A stretch of 64,000 nucleotides of DNA from Dendrobates tinctorius. Its lineage: Eukaryota. The position numbers and the translations under genes were made by a program. Under the pieces are notes generated by a model. That model ran no database searches, was not told the DNA's origin, and was given only the letters and a program-made list of their open reading frames with translations. Shown in pieces: positions 33,532-48,700 of this stretch; position 1 is the stretch's first letter; each line of letters opens with the position of its first letter. Where the stretch lies: assembly GCF_039654945.1 (NCBI RefSeq), contig NW_027361804.1:2976001-3040000 (forward strand), written 5' to 3'.

Positions 33532-36500
33532 ATGGCGGAAGGTGAGAAGCGACGTCTCATCCATCGGGTCTGATGTACGTGATCGCACCGGGCATCTATA
33601 ATGTTTCATATCACCTCTCTAGTAATGCCATACACTGTCCACGACAGCCGTACTGTGCCCACCGGGCCAGATCCCGTCCACATACAGCCGTACCGTGCCC
33701 ACCGGGGTCAGATCCCGTCCACATACAGCCGTACTGTGCCCACCGGGCCAGATCCCGTCCACATACAGCCGTACTGTGCCCACCGGGGTCAGATCCCGTC
33801 CACATACAGCCGTACTGTGCCCACCGGGGTCAGATCCCGTCCGCATACAGCCGTACCGTGCCCACCGGGGTCAGATCCCGTCCGCATACAGCCGTACCGT
33901 GCCCACCGGGCCAGATCCCGTCCGCATACAGCCGTACCGTGCCCACCGGGGTCAGATCCCGTCCGCATACAGCCGTACCGTGCCCACCGGGGTCAGATCC
34001 CGTCCGCATACAGCCGTACCGTGCCCACCGGGGTCAGATCCCGTCCGCATACAGCCGTACCGTGCCCACCGGGGTCAGATCCCGTCCGCATACAGCCGTA
34101 CCGTGCCCACCGGGGTCAGATCCCGTCCGCATACAGCCGTACCGTGCCCACCGGGGTCAGATCCCGTCCGCATACAGCCGTACCGTGCCCACCGGGGTCA
34201 GATCCCGTCCGCATACAGCCGTACCGTGCCCACCGGGGTCAGATCCCGTCCGCATACAGCCGTACCGTGCCCACCGGGGTCAGATCCCGTCCGCATACAG
34301 CCGTACCGTGCCCACCGGGGTCAGATCCCGTCCGCATACAGCCGTACCGTGCCCACCGGGGTCAGGTCCCGTCCGCATACAGCCGTACCGTGCCCACCGG
34401 GGTCAGATCCCGTCCGCATACAGCCGTACCGTGCCCACCGGGGTCAGATCCCGTCCGCATACAGCCGTACCGTGCCCACCGGGGCCAGATCCCGTCCGCA
34501 TACAGCCGTACCGTGCCCACCGGGGCCAGATCCCGTCCGCATACAGCCGTACCGTGCCCACCGGGCCAGATCCCGTCCGCATACAGCCGTACCGTGCCCA
34601 CCGGGCCAGATCCCGTCCGCATACAGCCGTACCGTGCCCACCGGGCCAGATCCCGTCCGCATACAGCCGTACCGTGCCCACCGGGCCAGATCCCGTCCGC
34701 ATACAGCCGTACCGTGCCCACCGGGCCAGATCCCGTCCGCATACAGCCGTACCGTGCCCACCGGGCCAGATCCCGTCCGCATACAGCCGTACCGTGCCCA
34801 CCGGGCCAGATCCCGTCCGCATACAGCCGTACCGTGCCCACCGGGCCAGATCCCGTCCGCATACAGCCGTACCGTGCCCACCGGGCCAGATCCCGTCCGC
34901 ATACAGCCGTACCGTGCCCACCGGGCCAGATCCCGTCCGCATACAGCCGTACCGTACCCACCGGGCCAGATCCCGTCCGCATACAGCCGTACCGTACCCA
35001 CCGGGCCAGATCCCGTCCGCATACAGCCGTACCGTGCCCACCGGGGTCAGATCCCGTCCGCATACAGCCGTACCGTGCCCACCGGGGTCAGATCCCGTCC
35101 GCATACAGCCGTACTGTGCCCACCGGGGTCAGGTCCCGTCCGCATACAGCTGTACTGTGCCCACAGGGGTCAGATCCTGTCCACATACAGCCGTACTGTG
35201 CCCACCGGGGTCAGATCCCGTCCACATACAGCCGTACTGTGCCCACCGGGGTCAGATCCCGTCCACATACAGCCGTACCGTGCCCACCGGGGTCAGATCC
35301 CGTCCGCATACAGCCGTACCGTGCCCACCGGGGTCAGATCCCGTCCGCATACAGCCGTACCGTGCCCACCGGGGCCAGATCCCGTCCGCATACAGCCGTA
35401 CCGTGCCCACCGGGCCAGATCCCGTCCGCATACAGCCGTACCGTGCCCACCGGGCCAGATCCCGTCCGCATACAGCCGTACCGTGCCCACCGGGCCAGAT
35501 CCCGTCCGCATACAGCCGTACCGTGCCCACCGGGCCAGATCCCGTCCGCATACAGCCGTACCGTGCCCACCGGGCCAGATCCCGTCCGCATACAGCCGTA
35601 CCGTGCCCACCGGGCCAGATCCCGTCCGCATACAGCCGTACTGTGCCCACCGGGCCAGATCCCGTCCGCATACAGCCGTACTGTACCCACCGGGCCAGAT
35701 CCCGTCCGCATACAGCCGTACTGTGCCCACCGGGGTCAGATCCCGTCCGCATACAGCCGTACTGTGCCCACCGGGGTCAGATCCCGTCCGCATACAGCCG
35801 TACTGTGCCCACCGGGGTCAGGTCCCGTCCGCATACAGCCGTACTGTGCCCACAGGGGTCAGATCCTGTCCACATACAGCCGTACTGTGCCCACCGGGGT
35901 CAGATCCCGTCCACATACAGCCGTACTGTGCCCACCGGGGTCAGATCCCGTCCACATACAGCCGTACTGTGCCCACCGGGGTCAGATCCTGTCCACATAC
36001 AGCCGTACTGTGCCCACCGGGGTCAGATCCCGTCCACATACAGCCGTACTGTGCCCACCGGGGTCAGATCCCGTCCACATACAGCCGTACTGTGCCCACC
36101 GGGGTCAGATCCCGTCCACATACAGCCGTACCGTGCCCACCGGGGTCAGATCCCGTCCACATACAGCCGTACCGTGCCCACCGGGGTCAGATCCCGTCCA
36201 CATACAGCCGTACCGTGCCCACCGGGGTCAGATCCCGTCCACATACAGCCGTACCGTGCCCACCGGGGTCAGATCCCGTCCACAACAAATCAATGAATCA
36301 AGAACATAGTAAATATCTGAGCACATCTAATATAACCAGTGGTTCCTCCAAATTTACCAAACGCCACTTATTACATCCCGCGCACTCGGGACTATTCACA
36401 CGTTCATGACCGATGTACTTGGTAGATCGGTTTGGCTGTTATAACCTGCTACAGACACGATTCATAGTTTGACAACGGCTTCTGGCAGTGTTCCTGAGAG

Positions 36501-39044
36501 ATCTGAGCTTGGTCCTCACGGGCAAAGGCCTCCAGGTCACTAATATTCTGGAATTGTCTTGAGAATGATCCAAAAAGTGAAGAGAAGAGATAAAGAGACA
36601 AGGGGAGCAGATGGGACCGGCTGCACTGGACATGAAGCAAGGCAGGGGCTCGGTGATGTTTACAGTGAAGCACAGCGGGGGCTCGGTGGTGTCTGTGTGT
36701 TTACAGTACAGCACAGCGGGGGCTCGGTGGTGTCTGTGTGTTTACAGTGAAGCACAGCGGGGGCTCGGTGGTGTCTGTGTGTTTACAGTGCAGCACAGCG
36801 GGGGCTCGGTGGTGTCTGTGTGTTTACAGTGAAGCACAGCGGGGGCTCGGTGGTGTCTGTGTGTTTACAGTGAAGCACAGCGGGGGCTCGGTGGTGTTTA
36901 CAGTGAAGCACAGCGGGGGCTCGGTGATGTTTACAGTGAAGCACAGCGGGGGCTCGGTGATGTTTACAGTGAAGCACAGCGGGGGCTCGGTGGTGTCTAA
37001 AGTGCAGCATGGTGTTGGCCACTGCCCATCAAGAATGCCGCCAGAACCTGGAGTATGGCTATGCATCACATCTGAAGCAGGTTATACCAGCCAGAAAGGT
37101 CTACTAAGGACTAAAGATACTGGTCATGTAAAAGTAAATAATCTCCAGAGGGCAGAAGTCGGTAATAAGTGGCATTTTGTGGTGAATTTGGAGAACCTAC
37201 CCGTTGTGTCAGCCACGAGAAGTGGTGAGTTCTCCTTCAATGGAAGTCTTCAAACAGAGGCTGGACAGACATCTGACTGGAATGATTTAGCGAATCCTGC
37301 TTTGAGCAGGGGTTGGACCAGATGGCCCAGGAGGTCCCTTCCAACTCTACGATTCTATGATTCTATGATTTATATTGTTCTTGTTTCGTTGGTTTAGTGT
37401 AAACAGCAGAAAGCTTGTAAACTTCTACAGCAGTAGAAAGACCCTTCCTCTGTTCATGACGGAGGACATCAGTAAGGCCATCCCCTCAGTCTGCATTTCA
37501 TTGACTGGTCGTTCAATGTGTCATCCCCAACAGGACACGTCCTGGACCAGAGCATTAGTCGTCTCATCCAGACCATCTCTATGGTAGTGCCAGCCATGGA
37601 TGACCTGAGACAGATGAAGCTCCTGACGGACGAGCAGTATGACCTTGTGAAGAACAACGGCACCACCCAAGAGCAGATGAGGGAACTTTACCGACATGTC
37701 AAGAGCTGGGGCCACGCTGAAAAAACAACAGTCTACAAATGTCTGAAGAACAGCAATCCACTGGTGGTGACCAACATGGAGAAGAGTCTGCAGTCCATTC
37801 ATAACTGGTCAGATCATAAAGCTCCTATGGCCGATTCCAATCACTCAGTCCGTAGGAAGCAATATGTCCAATCAAGTGTGGACCATAAACTAGGAGCAGA
37901 GATTAAAGAGGAGGTCATAACTGGTTTGGAAGAATGGTTCTTTCATGAGAGAACTCCGAGAGAAGACTGCACTGCAGACAGAGGCCAGCACCTGCATTCA
38001 CAGGAGAAACACAATGTACACCAAGTCCTGGAGGAAATGACTTCCCAAAATGGTCATCTTCATCAAAGAGTTCAGAAACTTCAAGAAGAAATGGGGGCGG
38101 AAAAAGCCAAAGCCGAGGATATCAGCAGGAGAATGAACGTCCTGTTCATAAACAGCAGAAGACAGCTGGATCTCCTGGAGAAACGAATCCTGAGTGAGAT
38201 CTCCAGACAAGAAGAGCAGGCGTCCAAGTCAGTCTCTGATCTGATCCAGAAGCTGAAGGTCAAGAACGAGGAGCTGTGCAGAGATATAGGTCACATCAAG
38301 GAGCTGCGTACCTCCAACGGACCACTGATGGCACTGCAGGAGACGGAATATAACACTAATACAGAGCGAGGAACAGAAAGGAGCCTTTGTGCTGTACGTG
38401 ACCATGATATGGACGTGGGTCTGATCTCCGCAATGTTACACTCCGGTCTATCAGACATGATCACCGGTATAAAGAGAGGAATCTACGCTCAGGAAATTAC
38501 TGACCTACTACTGGACGTAAACACGGCAGAAAACCACGTCCATATATCCGAAGATCTGAAGACTGCAACCTGGTCACAAAGAGACCTGCAGCGTCCGGAA
38601 TCCGAGGAGCGGTTCGACCACTCGCAGGTGCTCAGCAGCACCGGGGTTGCTACAGACCAGGGTTACTGGGAGGTGGAGACCAGCGGCACGGGGGCCTGGA
38701 GGGTAGGCATGAGCTACGCTGGCGTGGCCAGGAAGGGTCGGCAGGGCTCTGTAGGGAACAATGAGCAGTCCTGGGCTCTGTGCCGGTGGATTAACGGCCT
38801 GGAATACGCAGTCATACATAACTGGAAAACCACCCCGATCCCCGACAAGATCTCCTCTCAGAGGTTTGGGATCTACCTGGATTATGGGGCCGGGCGTCTC
38901 TCCTTCTACGAGTTGGGTGACCCTGTCAAACACTTACATACTTTCCTCTCCACCTTCACGGCACCGCTACATGCCGCCATCTACGTATGGGACAGAGAGT
39001 GTGATAAGGGCTGTTGGGTGCGGATCCGGAGCTACGAGAAATGA
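33532..39044 (+). CDS. CARD - coiled-coil - PRY/SPRY (B30.2) protein, TRIM-derived, RING-less; 506 aa, two coding exons
   Basis: Kozak ACCATGG at 33532 encodes MAE-G with a phase-1 donor G|GTGAGA at 33542, matching the phase-1 acceptor CCCCAACAG|GA at 37534, followed by an uninterrupted non-repetitive ORF to TGA 39044. CARD 37534-37787 (HVLDQ..RLIQTIS..MDDL..KLLTDEQYDLV..TTQEQMRELY..SWG..K..VYKCLK..NP). Coiled coil about 38010-38340. B30.2 38496-39035 (LDVNTA, PESEERFD, YWEVE, WRVG, SWAL, GIYLDYGAGRLSFY, HLHTF). Confidence 0.88.
33645..36285. repeat. 40-41-bp CpG-rich minisatellite (CATACAGCCGTACCGTGCCCACCGGGGTCAGATCCCGTCCG)n
   Basis: Direct tandem repetition; the ~900-aa ORFs in all three + frames are translations of it. 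Confidence 0.97.
36647..36997. repeat. 41/31-bp minisatellite (GTTTACAGTGAAGCACAGCGGGGGCTCGGTGGTGTCTGTGT)n
   Basis: Direct tandem repetition. Confidence 0.93.
37212..37369 (+). mobile_element. CR1 LINE 3' fragment
   Basis: GGTCCCTTCCAACTCT followed by a (GATTCTAT)n tail, typical of CR1 3' ends; closely matches the reverse complement of 41806-41960. Confidence 0.9.
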
Positions 39045-39537
39045 GGGAAGATGTGAGCAGAGAACTTCCATCTAGAGCCGGTGATCCCCAGGTGTCCAGA
39101 GCGGTGGCCACTGGTATACGTATATACCCGGGCCCTGGAGACACCGGCGTCACTCCCTGAACTTCTGCCAGACCAGGGAGCACTGATGCAGATGGCAAAG
39201 TGGGCACCGGGCGGAGCAGACACTCGTCCTACAGTCACAGCACCCGCCGATACCTCTGCACACAGGAGCGAAAGGCACCCATATCTAGTGTCCGGCCAAC
39301 AGGGGGCGCATCACGGCCTGTAGAGAGGGGCAGAGCGGTGACTAAGAGGGAGAGAAACTCATTCACAAACATGTCCGGCTCAGTGCACACCTTTATGAGT
39401 GATACTCATCAGTAACACCCCTGAAGAGAGAAGCCGAAGAGCAGGTGGACCAAAGTAAGCACCAAGGGACAAACAAGGCCCAGGACAGCACAAAGGGCCA
39501 AGATCGAACGCTGACATAATGTTCTGTCTGATTGTAC

Positions 39538-45720: not shown

Positions 45721-48700
45721 TCAGATCGGCGCCCTGCGGCGGCCGAGGCCCGGGTCGGCCCGCTCCGTGTACCTGATTAGATATTCGGGGTAGATCTGAT
45801 GTTTCTCAAACACGACAAATATGGAGGGATTACGCTCTGAGTCCACGCAGCTGTCGTAGAAGGTGGAGGAGGATTTTGAGGGCGGGCGCAGGTAAAGCGA
45901 CGAGCCACGGACGAAGTCACCGACCAGCACCCGGGCCACGAACATGGCGTATTGGGAGTCCACGCTGACGCAGTAACGGTGGGAGTACGCGGCGTCCCGA
46001 GCAAAGTAACTGCCTGCAAGAGAGAACAGGGATGTCATCACCGGGGCTGACAACCTCTGAGGCGTACACAGGCACGCTGTCAGCATGAATGTCCGCCGCT
46101 CCGCGCGGGTCTCTACCTTTCCCATACGACGTCCCATTCGTTCCACAGATTCGCCAGTCGAAGTTCTGCTGGCAGATGGCGTCTGTGAGGCCGCTGCTGG
46201 TGCCATGGAAAACCTGCCGCTCGTCCACCTCTCGGCCGCCGCTCAGCTTCTTCATCTGCTCCTTCTGCCTGTAACACAAGGATCGTCACTGTCCCCACTC
46301 ACGGGCGCGCGTCGGGGGCTCCACTCACACTCACCACTGGTACACCTCCCACAGCGCCGAGTTCTGGATCCGCTCCACGCTCTGGATCTGTTTGTCCGGC
46401 AGCGTGCGGCTGAACATGGCGTCGATCTTCTTATACTCCTCCGAAGACTGTGACAGGCGGACGACCTGCAGAGCGGGCAGAATGTAAGGAGCAATGCAGA
46501 TCTGAGGCACCACAGCACCCCCGGAGGCCTGGAGCACATATCACATCACTGAGACGTCTTCACATTAATTATCTGTGGTCCAGGCCGAAACTCCAAACTA
46601 TCAAAAATCGTCCTACAGGACTACAATCAGCTGACAGGATCCCTATAGACACTGCATCTTATTCTCCAGAGCTGCACTCACTATTCTGCTGTTACATCGT
46701 GTCTTATCCTCCAGTCACCTCCAGAGCTGCACTCACTATTCTGCTGTTACATCGTGTCTTATCCTCCAGTCACCTCCAGAGCTGCACTCACTATTCTGCT
46801 GCTACATCATGTATTATCCTCCAGTCACCTCCAGAGCTGCACTGAATATTCTACTTTTACATCATGTCTTATCCTCCAGAGCTGCAGTCCCTATTCTGCT
46901 GTTTCATCATGTCTTATCCTCCAGTCACCTCCAGAGCTGCACTGAATATTCTGCTTTTACATCATGTCTTATCCTCCAGAGCTGCAGTCCCTATTCTGCT
47001 GTTTCATCATGTCTTATCCTCCAGTCACCTCCAGAGCTGCACTGAATATTCTGCTTTTACATCATGTCTTATCCTCCAGAGCTGCAGTCCCTATTCTGCT
47101 GTTTCATCATGTCTTATCCTCCAGTCACCTCCAGAGCTGCACTGAATATTCTGCTGTTACATCATGTCTTATCCTCCGGTCACCTCCAGAGCTGCACTCA
47201 CTATTCTGCTGTTACATCGTGTCTTATCCTCCAGTCACCTCCAGAGCTGCACTGAATATTCTGCTTTTACATCATGTCTTATCCTCCAGAGCTGCAGTCC
47301 CTATTCTGCTGTTTCATCATGTCTTATCCTCCAGTCACCTCCAGAGCTGCACTGAATATTCTGCTGTTACATCATGTCTTATCCTCCAGTCACCTCCAGA
47401 GCTGCACTCACTATTCTGCTGTTACATCGTGTCTTATCCTCCAGTCACCTCCAGAGCTGCACTGAATATTCTGCTTTTACATCATGTCTTATCCTCCAGA
47501 GCTGCAGTCCCTATTCTGCTGTTACATTGCTGTTACATCGTGTCTTATTCTCCAGAGCTGCGTCCTGTGATCTCCCGCACACAGCAGGGTCCCGGCCGGG
47601 GTCTCCTCACCTTGTAGCCCACCTCGGGCAGCTGCCCCTTGTCCCAGTGCTCCGGGGTGGATTTGTCATTTGCCTTTGTTGGCTCCAACTTCCTATAAAT
47701 ATAATAATCCTCTTGTTAAAGGCGCATCGCTGTGCCCGCAGGTGAAGACACAGGAGCTCGGCTGCACGGCATTGTGGGAGGTGCCATAGAGAAAGCTACA
47801 TTGCTGAGCAGGGGGTGCGGTGTACACTACATCTCCCACAATGCAGTGCAGCAGACTGCAGAGCGATGACGATCAGCCAGGAGGCGCTACTGAGCCCCCA
47901 GAAGTCTACACGCTGCAGATGTCGTCATGGGGGAACCATCCGTCTGCTCCGCTTTTACCTTAGTTTCCTCTTCTTCACGTCCTCGGCCGACACAAACCTC
48001 GGCCTCCGGCACACCGCCCGCGCCGTGCCGTACTGCGTGTTCTTCTGCATCATTTCTAGGAGACAGAATGGAGACCGTCAGTAAGAAGGAAAGAAAGGAA
48101 GACAAGGGGGAAAAACAGGATGGGGAAAGAAGGGGGTGGGGCAACAAATGGAAAAGAGGGAGGAGCAAAAATAGGAGAAAAGGGAAGGGCTAAAATGGGG
48201 AGTGGGAGGGGCAAAGTGTGAGGGAGGAGCAAATAGGAGAAGAGGGAGGGGAAAATCATAGAGCCAATCATAGAGTGCCGCTTCCTCTTTATGGGATGTG
48301 ACTACTGACCCCAGCGGGTCCTACAGCAGCCAGGATCTGATAGGGGTAGACCTCTCCCCTCCCCCACACATTGATGCCCGCTGCACCCACCTCGGAAGCT
48401 CAGCACGTAGCTGTATTTCCCAGCCTTGAACTGAATGTTGGTGTCGGCAGCGGACAGGAAACCATTTTCAAGGTCGTTGCTTGTTATGGTGGACGAGGAC
48501 ATGTGGACGTCAGTCTGGAAGGAAACAGCATGGGTTAGACCCGCAGACGCGGAGTAAGACCCCACCACAGGAAACGCTGTGCTGGATTCTCAAATTGCCG
48601 CAGAAAACACACAGTGGGCAGGGTTTTATTTTTCTCTTTAACCCCTTTCTGACATTGGGCATAATAGTACGCCAGTGTCTGCCTCCCTCCCTCCGATGCA

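What the first reader, a model, noticed from the sequence alone, without database searches (positions are those of the whole stretch)
37534..38010. Fusion scar: ASC-like phase-1 CARD exon running intronless into a decapitated TRIM
Seen: the CARD begins exactly at a phase-1 acceptor and continues with no intron through a ~60-aa linker into C-x2-DRGQHLHSQ (about 37968-38003), then into the coiled coil. Knowledge, from memory: the CARD of PYCARD is a terminal phase-1 exon, and frogs have an expanded family of largely single-exon TRIM39/TRIM11-like genes whose B-box ends C-x2-DGEHRGHQ. Inference: the gene arose by read-through of an ASC-like terminal exon into a 5'-truncated single-exon TRIM, with a vestigial B-box tail marking the junction.
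Basis: partly seen in the sequence, partly recalled or inferred. Interest (0 to 1): 0.7.

Follow-up and report, generated by a model that had tools for sequence, protein, structure and literature searches.

The report
Frog CARD-TRIM fusion gene, RING lost
A poison-frog gene joins a caspase-recruitment domain (CARD) to the coiled coil and B30.2 sensor domain of a TRIM protein; other frogs show the CARD was first spliced onto a complete TRIM and that the RING, the B-boxes and the intron were lost later, so this is an old, conserved, expressed gene and not a fresh read-through scar.

Summary
In this Dendrobates tinctorius window a 3-codon first exon (33532-33541) splices in phase 1 to one long exon (37534-39044). 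That exon encodes CARD, a roughly 70-aa linker, a long coiled-coil helix and PRY/SPRY with no intron. RNA-derived contigs stop matching at the acceptor and run unbroken through the exon.

Orthologues in Mixophyes and Pseudophryne keep the CARD as its own phase 1-1 exon. An intron follows, then a single TRIM exon whose acceptor lies 2 nt before the TRIM's own ATG. Mixophyes still has an intact RING and B-box1. So the CARD was added by exon shuffling to a complete single-exon TRIM. The intron, RING and B-boxes were lost later, before Leptodactylidae and Dendrobatidae split.

A B-box relic is undetectable in Dendrobates itself.

dN/dS is below 1 in every segment. The likeliest function is a pyrin-like, CARD-signalling B30.2 sensor; this is inferred, not shown. 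The scan had already noted this gene on this window (s1-362206).

The parts
33532..33541 (+). First coding exon, coding part only: ATG GCG GAA G, then donor gtgag. It encodes Met-Ala-Glu plus one base (phase 1).
   Evidence: It matches the N-terminus MAEG of P0001. Start context is gaccATGG.
33542..37533 (+). Intron 1, about 4 kb. It is largely tandem repeats and carries a high-copy element at about 37250-37370. It ends ...ccccaacag.
   Evidence: RNA-contig depth falls to 0-2.4 in 37404-37480, against 3-14 in the exon.
37534..39044 (+). Second and last coding exon. It encodes CARD, linker, coiled coil and PRY/SPRY, with the stop at 39042-39044.
   Evidence: Single ORF. One tblastn HSP at 100% to P0001. 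An unbroken 1.4-kb RNA contig.
37534..37787 (+). CARD, residues 4-88 of P0001, of the ASC/NLRP1 type.
   Evidence: Pfam PF00619, E 2.3e-13. PDB matches: zebrafish ASC CARD 5gpq at E 1.9e-8 and NLRP1 7crw at 2.8e-8. AF2 predicts six helices. dN/dS is 0.15-0.5.
37788..37994 (+). Linker, residues 89-157. It is what remains of the region that holds the CARD-exon donor, the intron, the TRIM start, RING, B-box1 and B-box2 in Mixophyes.
   Evidence: Alignment A1. AF2 pLDDT is below 50 over 89-157. Pfam, hhalign and a frog-TRIM HMM find no B-box signal in Dendrobates itself. dN/dS is 0.3-0.85.
37875..37979 (+). Probable relic of the B-box1 tail, the inter-box stretch and the first half of B-box2: SVDHKLGAEIKEEVITGLEE-WFFHERTPREDCTAD.
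   Evidence: This rests on orthology to two other species. Anomaloglossus QECVFHERALRYDCTEN matches the TRIM profile C-x2-H-x7-C-x2-D without gaps (9.4-9.8 bits, shuffle p 0.002-0.004). Leptodactylus VDHKPAAHTLAEIRTRLQNEQ matches the B-box1 tail and inter-box stretch (p about 0.01). The signal is not significant in Dendrobates alone.
37968..38003 (+).
   Evidence: It is deleted in Phyllobates and absent in Leptodactylus. The Cys aligns with the third zinc ligand of B-box2.
37995..38315 (+). TRIM coiled-coil helix, residues 158-264.
   Evidence: AF2 predicts a single helix over 158-264 at pLDDT about 70-86. Homology to the TRIM HMM starts at profile position about 179 (SEKKKEKLRN), right after B-box2.
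38505..38999 (+). PRY/SPRY (B30.2) domain.
   Evidence: Pfam PRY at 2.3e-8 and SPRY at 1.6e-14. AF2 pLDDT is about 85-96. The closest solved structure is TRIM14 PRYSPRY 6jbm, E 9.5e-24. dN/dS is 0.1-0.2.
39045..39527 (+). 3' UTR, at least this long. An ATTAAA lies at about 39538.
   Evidence: RNA contigs X15 (38807-39527) and X17 (38149-39513) match with no mismatch. Sequence.

Best explanation
This is the Dendrobates tinctorius orthologue of a frog-specific CARD-TRIM gene.

Origin, largely shown. In an ancestor of hyloid and Australian (myobatrachoid) frogs, a promoter, a 3-4-codon first exon and a phase 1-1 CARD exon came to lie upstream of a complete single-exon class-IV TRIM (RING, B-box1, B-box2, coiled coil, PRY/SPRY). 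The CARD exon was spliced to an acceptor 2 nt before the TRIM's ATG. Mixophyes still has this state. The ubiquitin-ligase head then became dispensable. The Pseudophryne RING has lost its cysteines. Before Leptodactylidae and Dendrobatidae split, the donor, intron, TRIM start, RING and most of B-box1 were removed, and B-box2 decayed. What remains is one exon whose disordered linker carries faint B-box relics.

Function, inferred. The coiled coil would dimerise the protein as in other TRIMs. The strongly constrained B30.2 domain would bind a ligand or a modified host protein. The ASC/NLRP1-type CARD would then nucleate CARD-CARD assembly with caspase-1 or ASC. That makes it a CARD-bearing analogue of pyrin (PYD, B-box, coiled coil, B30.2), acting as a scaffold or sensor rather than an E3 ligase.
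For: Gene model and expression.

Orthologues with CARD in Ranitomeya, Phyllobates, Anomaloglossus, Leptodactylus, Mixophyes and Pseudophryne.

Exon structure:
- In Mixophyes (L001) and Pseudophryne (L002) the CARD (aa 5-92) and the TRIM (aa 93 to the end) are two exons, 0.85 and 10.3 kb apart. The donor is CCA G|gtaac and the acceptor is ag|TT ATG or ag|TA ATG.
- In Leptodactylus and all four dendrobatoids, CARD to stop is one exon.
- The Mixophyes RING is detected by Pfam at E 2e-10. The Pseudophryne RING is not detected.

Single origin:
- The TRIM halves form one split, SH-aLRT 96.
- The CARDs form one split, SH-aLRT 96, with the same inner topology.
- The C-terminal signature VW[DN][RK]xCxxxWVRIRS occurs in only these genes among the 120 listed proteins.
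- The MA(A)EG|H first exon is shared.
- The Mixophyes RING/B-box region is 52-54% identical to paralogues, against 61-63% for coiled coil plus B30.2, so it is not a recent graft.

B-box relics in Anomaloglossus and Leptodactylus.

Purifying selection: dN/dS is 0.15-0.5 for the CARD, 0.25-0.5 for the coiled coil and 0.1-0.2 for B30.2.

CARD type: zebrafish ASC at 1.9e-8 and NLRP1 at 2.8e-8.

Fold: six-helix CARD, disordered linker, 107-residue helix, confident B30.2.
Against: Only two lineages carry the gene in the databases searched. The polarity (full TRIM ancestral) therefore rests on the RING-bearing paralogues as outgroup, not on a third lineage.

No B-box signal is detectable in the Dendrobates linker itself (p 0.6-0.9; nothing by Pfam or hhalign). 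The relic is inferred through orthology and from nominal p-values drawn from many comparisons.

The way the intron was lost cannot be decided from the junction codons. The candidates are one genomic deletion, or precise cDNA-mediated loss followed by in-frame deletions.

No annotated orthologue turned up in Bufo, Hyla, Eleutherodactylus, Engystomops or ranoids. The gene may have been lost often, which would not fit an essential role.

The function is wholly inferred. No binding partner, ligand or inducibility was tested. The AF2 confidence for the CARD is only moderate (pLDDT 55-75).
Confidence: 0.68

Rival explanations
1. A terminal, ASC-like CARD exon lost its stop or polyadenylation signal and read through into an already 5'-truncated single-exon TRIM. 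The intronless junction would then be the primary fusion scar.
For: In Dendrobates, the other dendrobatoids and Leptodactylus, the CARD runs without an intron into the TRIM remnant. The CARD matches ASC CARDs in the PDB. The TRIM paralogues are single-exon.
Against: Orthologues in Mixophyes and Pseudophryne have a spliced CARD exon with its own donor, and a full-length TRIM exon starting at the TRIM's own Met. Both halves show one origin. The CARD is an internal phase 1-1 exon behind a 3-4-codon exon, not a terminal exon. Frog ASC CARDs (Bombina, Phyllobates) fall in the other half of the CARD tree.
Confidence: 0.07
2. Two independent events. The hyloid intronless gene is the older or a separate fusion. 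The Mixophyes/Pseudophryne gene arose when a copy of the CARD exon was spliced to a different, intact TRIM, or when gene conversion from a paralogue restored the RING and B-boxes.
For: CARD exons are clearly mobile in frogs. Examples are a CARD-lysozyme g gene 15 kb upstream in Mixophyes, CARD-RING proteins in Hyperolius and Rana, and multi-CARD arrays. The Mixophyes coiled coil plus B30.2 is closer to Mixophyes paralogues (61-63%) than to Dendrobates (56%).
Against: The TRIM halves group together (SH-aLRT 96). They share a unique C-terminal insertion found in no other of the 120 listed proteins. The CARDs group together with the same topology. The first exon and its phase are the same. The RING/B-box part of Mixophyes is more diverged from paralogues than the rest of the protein, not less.
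Confidence: 0.08
3. Functional rival. The protein is not a sensor that activates caspase-1. It would instead be a regulator or adaptor. One version is a CARD-only-protein-like inhibitor that caps CARD filaments. Another is a TRIM14-like, RING-less adaptor that tethers CARD-containing partners.
For: The B30.2 is closest to TRIM14 (6jbm, E 9.5e-24), and TRIM14 is a RING-less adaptor (established knowledge). The ancestral form with a RING (Mixophyes) could have ubiquitinated CARD partners. CARD-only regulators of this CARD type exist in frogs (P0171, P0175, P0183).
Against: A pure decoy would not need a long coiled coil and a B30.2 held at dN/dS 0.1-0.2. The architecture parallels known death-fold plus B30.2 sensors. 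Nothing here tells activation from inhibition.
Confidence: 0.2
4. The gene model is an annotation artefact or a decaying pseudogene with no function.
For: The linker is fast-evolving and predicted disordered. A tandem copy in Anomaloglossus has lost its CARD and carries stop codons upstream of its ORF. The gene is annotated only as an uncharacterized protein.
Against: The frame is open in five hyloid species. dN/dS is well below 1 in the CARD, coiled coil and B30.2. Spliced, mismatch-free RNA contigs occur in several runs and studies.
Confidence: 0.03

Closest known systems
Pyrin / TRIM20 (MEFV)
   Same: Both have a death-fold domain at the N-terminus of a TRIM-derived coiled coil plus B30.2, with no RING. 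Pyrin's B30.2 is among the PDB matches (4cg4, 2wl1, E about 1e-14). The expected logic is the same: a dimeric scaffold that couples a B30.2 or regulatory input to death-fold polymerisation.
   Different: This gene has a CARD instead of a PYD, so it could engage caspase-1 directly. It has no B-box, only a relic, whereas pyrin keeps one. It arose independently from a frog-expanded single-exon TRIM clade, and it is not a pyrin orthologue as far as tested. Pyrin's phosphorylated 14-3-3 linker has no visible counterpart.
TRIM14 and the frog 'TRIM25/39/11/14-like' single-exon TRIM expansion
   Same: The coiled-coil plus PRY/SPRY half is homologous to them. TRIM14 PRYSPRY is the best solved match (6jbm, 9.5e-24). 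Frog paralogues are 41-50% identical. The coding sequence is single-exon. TRIM14 is also RING-less.
   Different: This gene carries an N-terminal CARD exon and has lost both B-boxes. It also has a unique C-terminal insertion, RECDKGCWVRIRSYEK.
ASC (PYCARD) and NLRP1/CARD8 CARDs
   Same: The CARD is of this subfamily. Matches are zebrafish ASC 5gpq at 1.9e-8, NLRP1 7crw at 2.8e-8 and human ASC at about 1e-6.
   Different: There is no PYD and no FIIND. The CARD is N-terminal and on an internal phase 1-1 exon. Frog ASC CARDs are not its nearest relatives in the tree, although support is weak.
Fish NLR-B30.2 proteins (NLR-C / zebrafish NLRP3-like)
   Same: They are another vertebrate case in which a TRIM-type B30.2 was shuffled into a death-fold signalling protein.
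   Different: Those have a NACHT-LRR core and no TRIM coiled coil. This gene has no NACHT. The comparison rests on general knowledge and on the titles and abstracts; it was not tested here.

Membership tests
CARD (PF00619) death-fold domain | Sequence match above the Pfam gathering score, and a six-helix bundle. | tested here: met
   50.4 bits against a cut-off of 23.9, E 2.3e-13. AF2 predicts six helices over residues 3-93.
TRIM / RBCC family | N-terminal RING finger. | tested here: not met
   There is no RING in Dendrobates. It is present in the Mixophyes orthologue (Pfam E 2e-10) and degenerate in Pseudophryne.
TRIM / RBCC family | One or two B-box zinc fingers. | tested here: not met
   Pfam, hhalign and a frog-TRIM HMM find none in the Dendrobates linker. 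Only a relic is inferred, via Anomaloglossus and Leptodactylus. The zinc ligands are mostly gone.
TRIM / RBCC family | Coiled coil followed by PRY/SPRY (class IV), and descent from a TRIM gene. | tested here: met
   HMM homology runs from profile position about 179 onward. AF2 predicts a helix over 158-264. PRY and SPRY are above the Pfam cut-offs. The orthologue with a full RBCC is, and the tree is.
ASC (PYCARD) | PYD followed by a C-terminal CARD on a terminal exon. | tested here: not met
   There is no PYD. The CARD is N-terminal, and in Mixophyes and Pseudophryne it is an internal exon with a donor site. I could not read the phase of frog ASC exons because the tool returned no DNA.
Pyrin / TRIM20 | PYD, B-box, coiled coil and B30.2, plus orthology to MEFV. 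| tested here: not met
   It has a CARD, not a PYD, and no B-box. Its nearest relatives are frog TRIM25/39/11/14-like genes. The resemblance is one of architecture, not of membership.
Inflammasome-type sensor (functional class) | Ligand-dependent nucleation of ASC or caspase-1 through its death-fold domain. | not testable with these tools
   This is inferred only from the CARD subtype and the architecture.

The most novel reading that the evidence does not exclude
Frogs built a second, independent 'pyrin': a TRIM that gained a CARD instead of a PYD and then shed its ubiquitin-ligase head. Living species preserve each stage:
- Mixophyes: CARD plus an intact RBCC.
- Pseudophryne: the RING is decaying.
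- Leptodactylus and the dendrobatids: the RING, B-boxes and intron are gone.
- Anomaloglossus: a B-box2 relic, plus a CARD-less tandem copy.

If the CARD directly nucleates caspase-1, this would be an ASC-independent B30.2 inflammasome sensor. It would also be a natural series showing how an E3 ligase turns into a signalling scaffold.
Probability: 0.35. Interest if true: 0.75.

Novelty: new variant of a known kind. Interest (0 to 1): 0.55.

Why it matters
Death-fold domains fused to B30.2 sensors are known, for example pyrin and the fish NLR-B30.2 proteins. I found no paper describing a CARD-TRIM or CARD-B30.2 protein, and the frog genes are annotated only as 'uncharacterized' or 'TRIM14/39-like'.

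The orthologue series dates and orders the steps of a domain-shuffling event: exon capture, then loss of the RING, then loss of the intron and B-boxes. It also parallels how pyrin is thought to have arisen from a TRIM.

It offers a testable candidate for an amphibian innate sensor. That is of interest given amphibian disease ecology, although no link to any pathogen is shown here.

For the scan, the lesson is that an apparent fusion scar in one genome was a secondary state. The primary junction was a splice, visible only in other species.

Tried and rejected
1. B-box homology in the Dendrobates linker.
- Smith-Waterman against the Mixophyes and Pseudophryne N-terminal regions and against a TRIM consensus gave shuffle p of 0.3-0.8.
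- hhalign of the five-species linker alignment against 96 frog TRIMs aligned only the start of the coiled coil.
- Pfam at E up to 10 found nothing.
- Sub-HMMs for B-box1 and B-box2 gave p of 0.55-0.87.
- Only Anomaloglossus and Leptodactylus gave a nominal signal.

2. Telling precise intron loss from read-through plus deletion. The junction codons and the Mixophyes/Pseudophryne splice-site DNA are too short and too diverged to decide.

3. Synteny by tblastx of the window against the orthologous loci. The output was swamped by repeats and the job timed out. A narrower tblastn with ORFs from the Phyllobates PARP12 flank matched the window at 45757-46557 (-). The 8-kb flanks of Mixophyes, Pseudophryne and Leptodactylus gave no match.

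4. Reading the exon phase of frog ASC (Bombina) and of a CARD-NLR (Gastrophryne). The tool returned no DNA.

5. P0014, the 'MADSNHS...' protein of Anomaloglossus, as evidence that the linker Met is the old TRIM start. It is a tandem duplicate whose CARD is largely deleted and interrupted by stops, so its Met is simply the first ATG left.

6. The ranoid proteins P0009-P0012 are triple-B30.2 proteins without a CARD and are not orthologues.

7. ORFs elsewhere in the window are mostly tandem-repeat artefacts.
Full report
**What is there**

The window comes from Dendrobates tinctorius. The ORF at 37518-39044 is 100% identical to an NCBI 'uncharacterized protein' of that species (P0001, 506 aa). The gene has two coding exons.
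- Exon 1 contributes ATG GCG GAA G (33532-33541, donor gtgag).
- Exon 2 starts after ...ccccaacag at 37534 and runs to the stop at 39042-39044.

The junction is in phase 1 (G|GA = Gly4).

Pfam finds a CARD that starts with the first residue of exon 2 (E 2.3e-13), then PRY and SPRY near the C-terminus. An AlphaFold2 model built from 40 aligned frog TRIMs shows four regions:
- a six-helix CARD;
- a low-confidence stretch at residues 89-157 (pLDDT below 50);
- one long helix at 158-264;
- a confident B30.2 domain.

**Is it transcribed as read?**

Twenty small public runs hold the exon. In four of them the contigs behave as RNA.
- Depth in the intron just upstream (37404-37480) is 0-2.4, against 3-14 in the exon.
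- Alignments end at 37532/37533 in X16, X17 and X11. The two extra bases are the AG shared by the end of exon 1 and the end of the intron. The X17 contig carries 31 further unmatched letters upstream.
- One 1527-nt contig covers 37532-38944 with no mismatch and no joint.
- Contigs extend to 39513-39527, so the 3' UTR is at least 480 nt.

One X15 contig crosses the acceptor unspliced. The tool did not print the loose ends at 37532, so their identity with exon 1 is inferred.

**Relatives and the key result**

Proteins with CARD, coiled coil and B30.2 exist in six other frogs:
- Ranitomeya (89% identical);
- Phyllobates (82%);
- Anomaloglossus (77%);
- Leptodactylus (57%);
- the Australian frogs Mixophyes (P0006) and Pseudophryne (P0007), at 56% over the aligned part.

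P0006 reads CARD, RING, B-box, coiled coil, PRY/SPRY. I mapped each protein onto its own genomic locus.

In Mixophyes (L001) and Pseudophryne (L002), CARD residues 5-92 form a separate exon. The rest (RING to stop) is one further exon, 0.85 kb and 10.3 kb downstream respectively. The CARD exon is 264 nt and phase 1-1. It ends CCA G|gtaac. The next exon begins ag|TT ATG GCT TCT in Mixophyes and ag|TA ATG GCT TCT in Pseudophryne, which is 2 nt before the TRIM's own Met-Ala-Ser start.

In Leptodactylus (L003), Anomaloglossus (L004), Ranitomeya (L006), Phyllobates (L007) and the window, CARD to stop is a single exon.

**One origin or two?**

Four lines of evidence point to one origin.
- A tree of the coiled-coil plus B30.2 half, with 60 other frog TRIMs, places the seven CARD-TRIMs and an Anomaloglossus tandem copy on one side of a branch (SH-aLRT 96).
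- A tree of 60 CARDs does the same for the seven CARDs (SH-aLRT 96). Its inner split, Mixophyes plus Pseudophryne against the hyloids, is the same.
- All eight genes, and none of the other 112 listed proteins, carry the C-terminal signature VW[DN][RK]xCxxxWVRIRS.
- The tiny first exon (MAEG or MAAEG) and its phase are shared.

The Mixophyes RING/B-box region is 52-54% identical to its best paralogues, against 61-63% for the rest of the TRIM. It is therefore not a recent graft.

The fusion thus predates the split of hyloid and myobatrachoid frogs. From memory of published frog timetrees that split is on the order of 100 million years old; I did not test this. dS between Dendrobates and Mixophyes is saturated at 1.3-2.5.

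**Polarity**

All paralogues have RING, B-box1, B-box2, coiled coil and B30.2 in one exon with their own ATG. The D. tinctorius paralogue P0058 spans 1581 nt for 526 aa plus stop. The Mixophyes TRIM exon starts 2 nt before such an ATG and still scores as a RING (Pfam E 2e-10).

The ancestral fusion therefore joined a CARD exon to a complete TRIM by splicing. The Pseudophryne RING has lost most of its cysteines and is no longer detected.

In the hyloids, a stretch of about 70 residues stands in for roughly 170 residues plus the intron. This state is shared by Leptodactylus and the dendrobatoids, so it arose before those families split.

**Is the linker a B-box relic?**

In Dendrobates itself nothing is detectable.
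- Local alignment gives shuffle p of 0.3-0.8.
- hhalign aligns only the start of the coiled coil.
- Pfam finds nothing at E up to 10.
- Sub-HMMs of 96 frog TRIMs give p of 0.55-0.87.

Two orthologues do show a signal.
- Anomaloglossus EEKVMMGLQECVFHERALRYDCTENK aligns without gaps to the profile stretch dpttslenrkCsvHkkileyyCteDa, which is the first half of B-box2, C-x2-H-x7-C-x2-D (9.4-9.8 bits, p 0.002-0.004).
- Leptodactylus ...VDHKPAAHTLAEIRTRLQNEQ aligns to the B-box1 tail and the inter-box stretch (p about 0.01).

The two signals are adjacent and colinear, and the linkers of the five hyloids align with each other unambiguously. So Dendrobates 37875-37979 (SVDHK...WFFHERTPREDCTAD) is probably the same relic, with the first Cys now Trp.

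The RGQH that follows could still be the remnant of the ...EHRGHQ tail after an internal deletion, but this cannot be shown.

The motif is deleted in Phyllobates and absent in Leptodactylus, so it has no conserved role. The first 30 or so linker residues (SLQSIHNWSDHKAPMADSNHSVRRKQYVQS) are of undetermined origin. Whether the intron was lost precisely or by a deletion that also took the RING cannot be decided.

**Where did the CARD come from?**

By sequence it belongs with the ASC and NLRP1 CARDs: zebrafish ASC 5gpq at E 1.9e-8, and NLRP1 7crw at 2.8e-8. An exhaustive search of 1.84 billion representatives found 362 related proteins. Those looked up by name or read from their loci were all from frogs.

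The nearest CARD in the tree is that of a Mixophyes CARD-goose-type-lysozyme gene (P0168). It lies about 15 kb upstream of the Mixophyes CARD-TRIM on the same strand. Next come N-terminal CARDs of frog NLRs, a caspase-1 and small CARD-only proteins. ASC CARDs of Bombina and of the dendrobatid Phyllobates fall in the other half of the tree. Support for these deep nodes is weak (82-91 SH-aLRT on 89 columns).

The exon has a donor site and sits behind a 3-4-codon first exon. This points to the 5' end of a CARD-first gene as donor, or to a locally duplicated cassette exon, rather than to ASC's terminal exon. 'ASC-like' is right at the subfamily level only.

**Is it functional, and what does it do?**

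Pairwise Nei-Gojobori dN/dS values among the orthologues are as follows:

| Segment | dN/dS |
|---|---|
| CARD | 0.15-0.5 |
| Linker | 0.3-0.85 |
| Coiled coil | 0.25-0.5 |
| B30.2 | 0.1-0.2 |

The frame is open in five hyloids and two Australian frogs, and the gene is expressed. So it is a working gene whose linker is the least constrained part.

The B30.2 is closest to TRIM14 among solved structures (6jbm, 9.5e-24). Pyrin, TRIM21, TRIM25 and the butyrophilins follow.

I infer a pyrin-like mechanism. A coiled-coil dimer presents two B30.2 sensor domains. On ligand binding or clustering it uses its CARDs to seed caspase-1 or ASC CARD filaments. Loss of the RING in two lineages fits a shift from E3 ligase to scaffold. 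None of these steps was tested. An inhibitory or adaptor role is the main functional rival.

**Novelty**

Full-text searches found no paper on CARD-TRIM or CARD-B30.2 proteins. I rate this a new variant of a known kind: death-fold plus TRIM-derived sensor.

The scan's first-stage notes already list this gene on this window as a candidate pyrin analogue (s1-362206), and a withheld follow-up exists.

No N stretches were filled. Read laying was given 2,281 letters.

Noticed in passing
L008:14110-20525 (Mixophyes fleayi CM076008.1), about 15 kb upstream of the CARD-TRIM gene in L001, same strand: The gene for P0168 fuses an N-terminal CARD exon (about 50% identical to the CARD-TRIM's CARD, also ending ...RRPQP) to a complete goose-type lysozyme (3gxk, E 3.6e-59). 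In the alignment, the Glu of the conserved 'SRES' motif is Ser in P0168. From memory that Glu is the catalytic one, so this may be a CARD-coupled, catalytically dead peptidoglycan binder.
   Followed up: partly
L005:9400-10945 (Anomaloglossus baeobatrachus), about 24 kb downstream of its CARD-TRIM (L004): A tandem duplicate of the CARD-TRIM gene. Most of its CARD is deleted and stop codons interrupt the remnant. The annotated 314-aa protein P0014 ('TRIM14-like') starts at the linker Met (MADSNHS...) and keeps an open coiled-coil/B30.2 frame.
   Followed up: partly
Proteins P0121-P0142 and P0144-P0167 (for example Mantella P0121, Hyla sarda P0122, Dendropsophus P0123/P0124, Lithobates P0125, Leptodactylus P0134): Frog proteins with 2 to 12 tandem CARDs of this subtype. 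Also seen: CARD-RING proteins in Hyperolius and Rana (P0199, P0155, P0236), a Hyperolius protein with B-box, RING, FIIND and CARD (P0180), and a Phyllobates ASC with two CARDs (P0143). The CARD exon looks like a highly mobile cassette in anurans.
   Followed up: partly
window:37250-37370: A high-copy element just upstream of exon 2. Summed contig depth is 10^3-10^5 in all four runs, and many contigs diverge at 37366-37370. It is probably a transcribed SINE or transposon fragment.
   Followed up: no
window:33573-36400 and 36440-37100: Intron 1 is dominated by tandem repeats that stay open in several frames. They produce spurious 900-aa ORFs on the + strand.
   Followed up: no
window:39532-40430 and onward to about 45000: An array of short tandem repeats starts right after the 3' UTR, open in all frames. 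Another first-stage note describes a 57-bp repeat here.
   Followed up: no
window:21090-21539 (+) and 45757-46557 (-): A cytochrome P450 exon (Pfam E 3.6e-13) lies upstream. Downstream on the minus strand are matches (69-85% aa identity) to ORFs from the Phyllobates flank that holds PARP12. Both fit the TBXAS1/PARP12 setting noted by the first stage.
   Followed up: partly
P0009-P0012 (Aquarana, Rana, Mantella, one unnamed): Ranoid proteins of about 600 aa made of three consecutive PRY/SPRY domains, with no RING, B-box or CARD.
   Followed up: no
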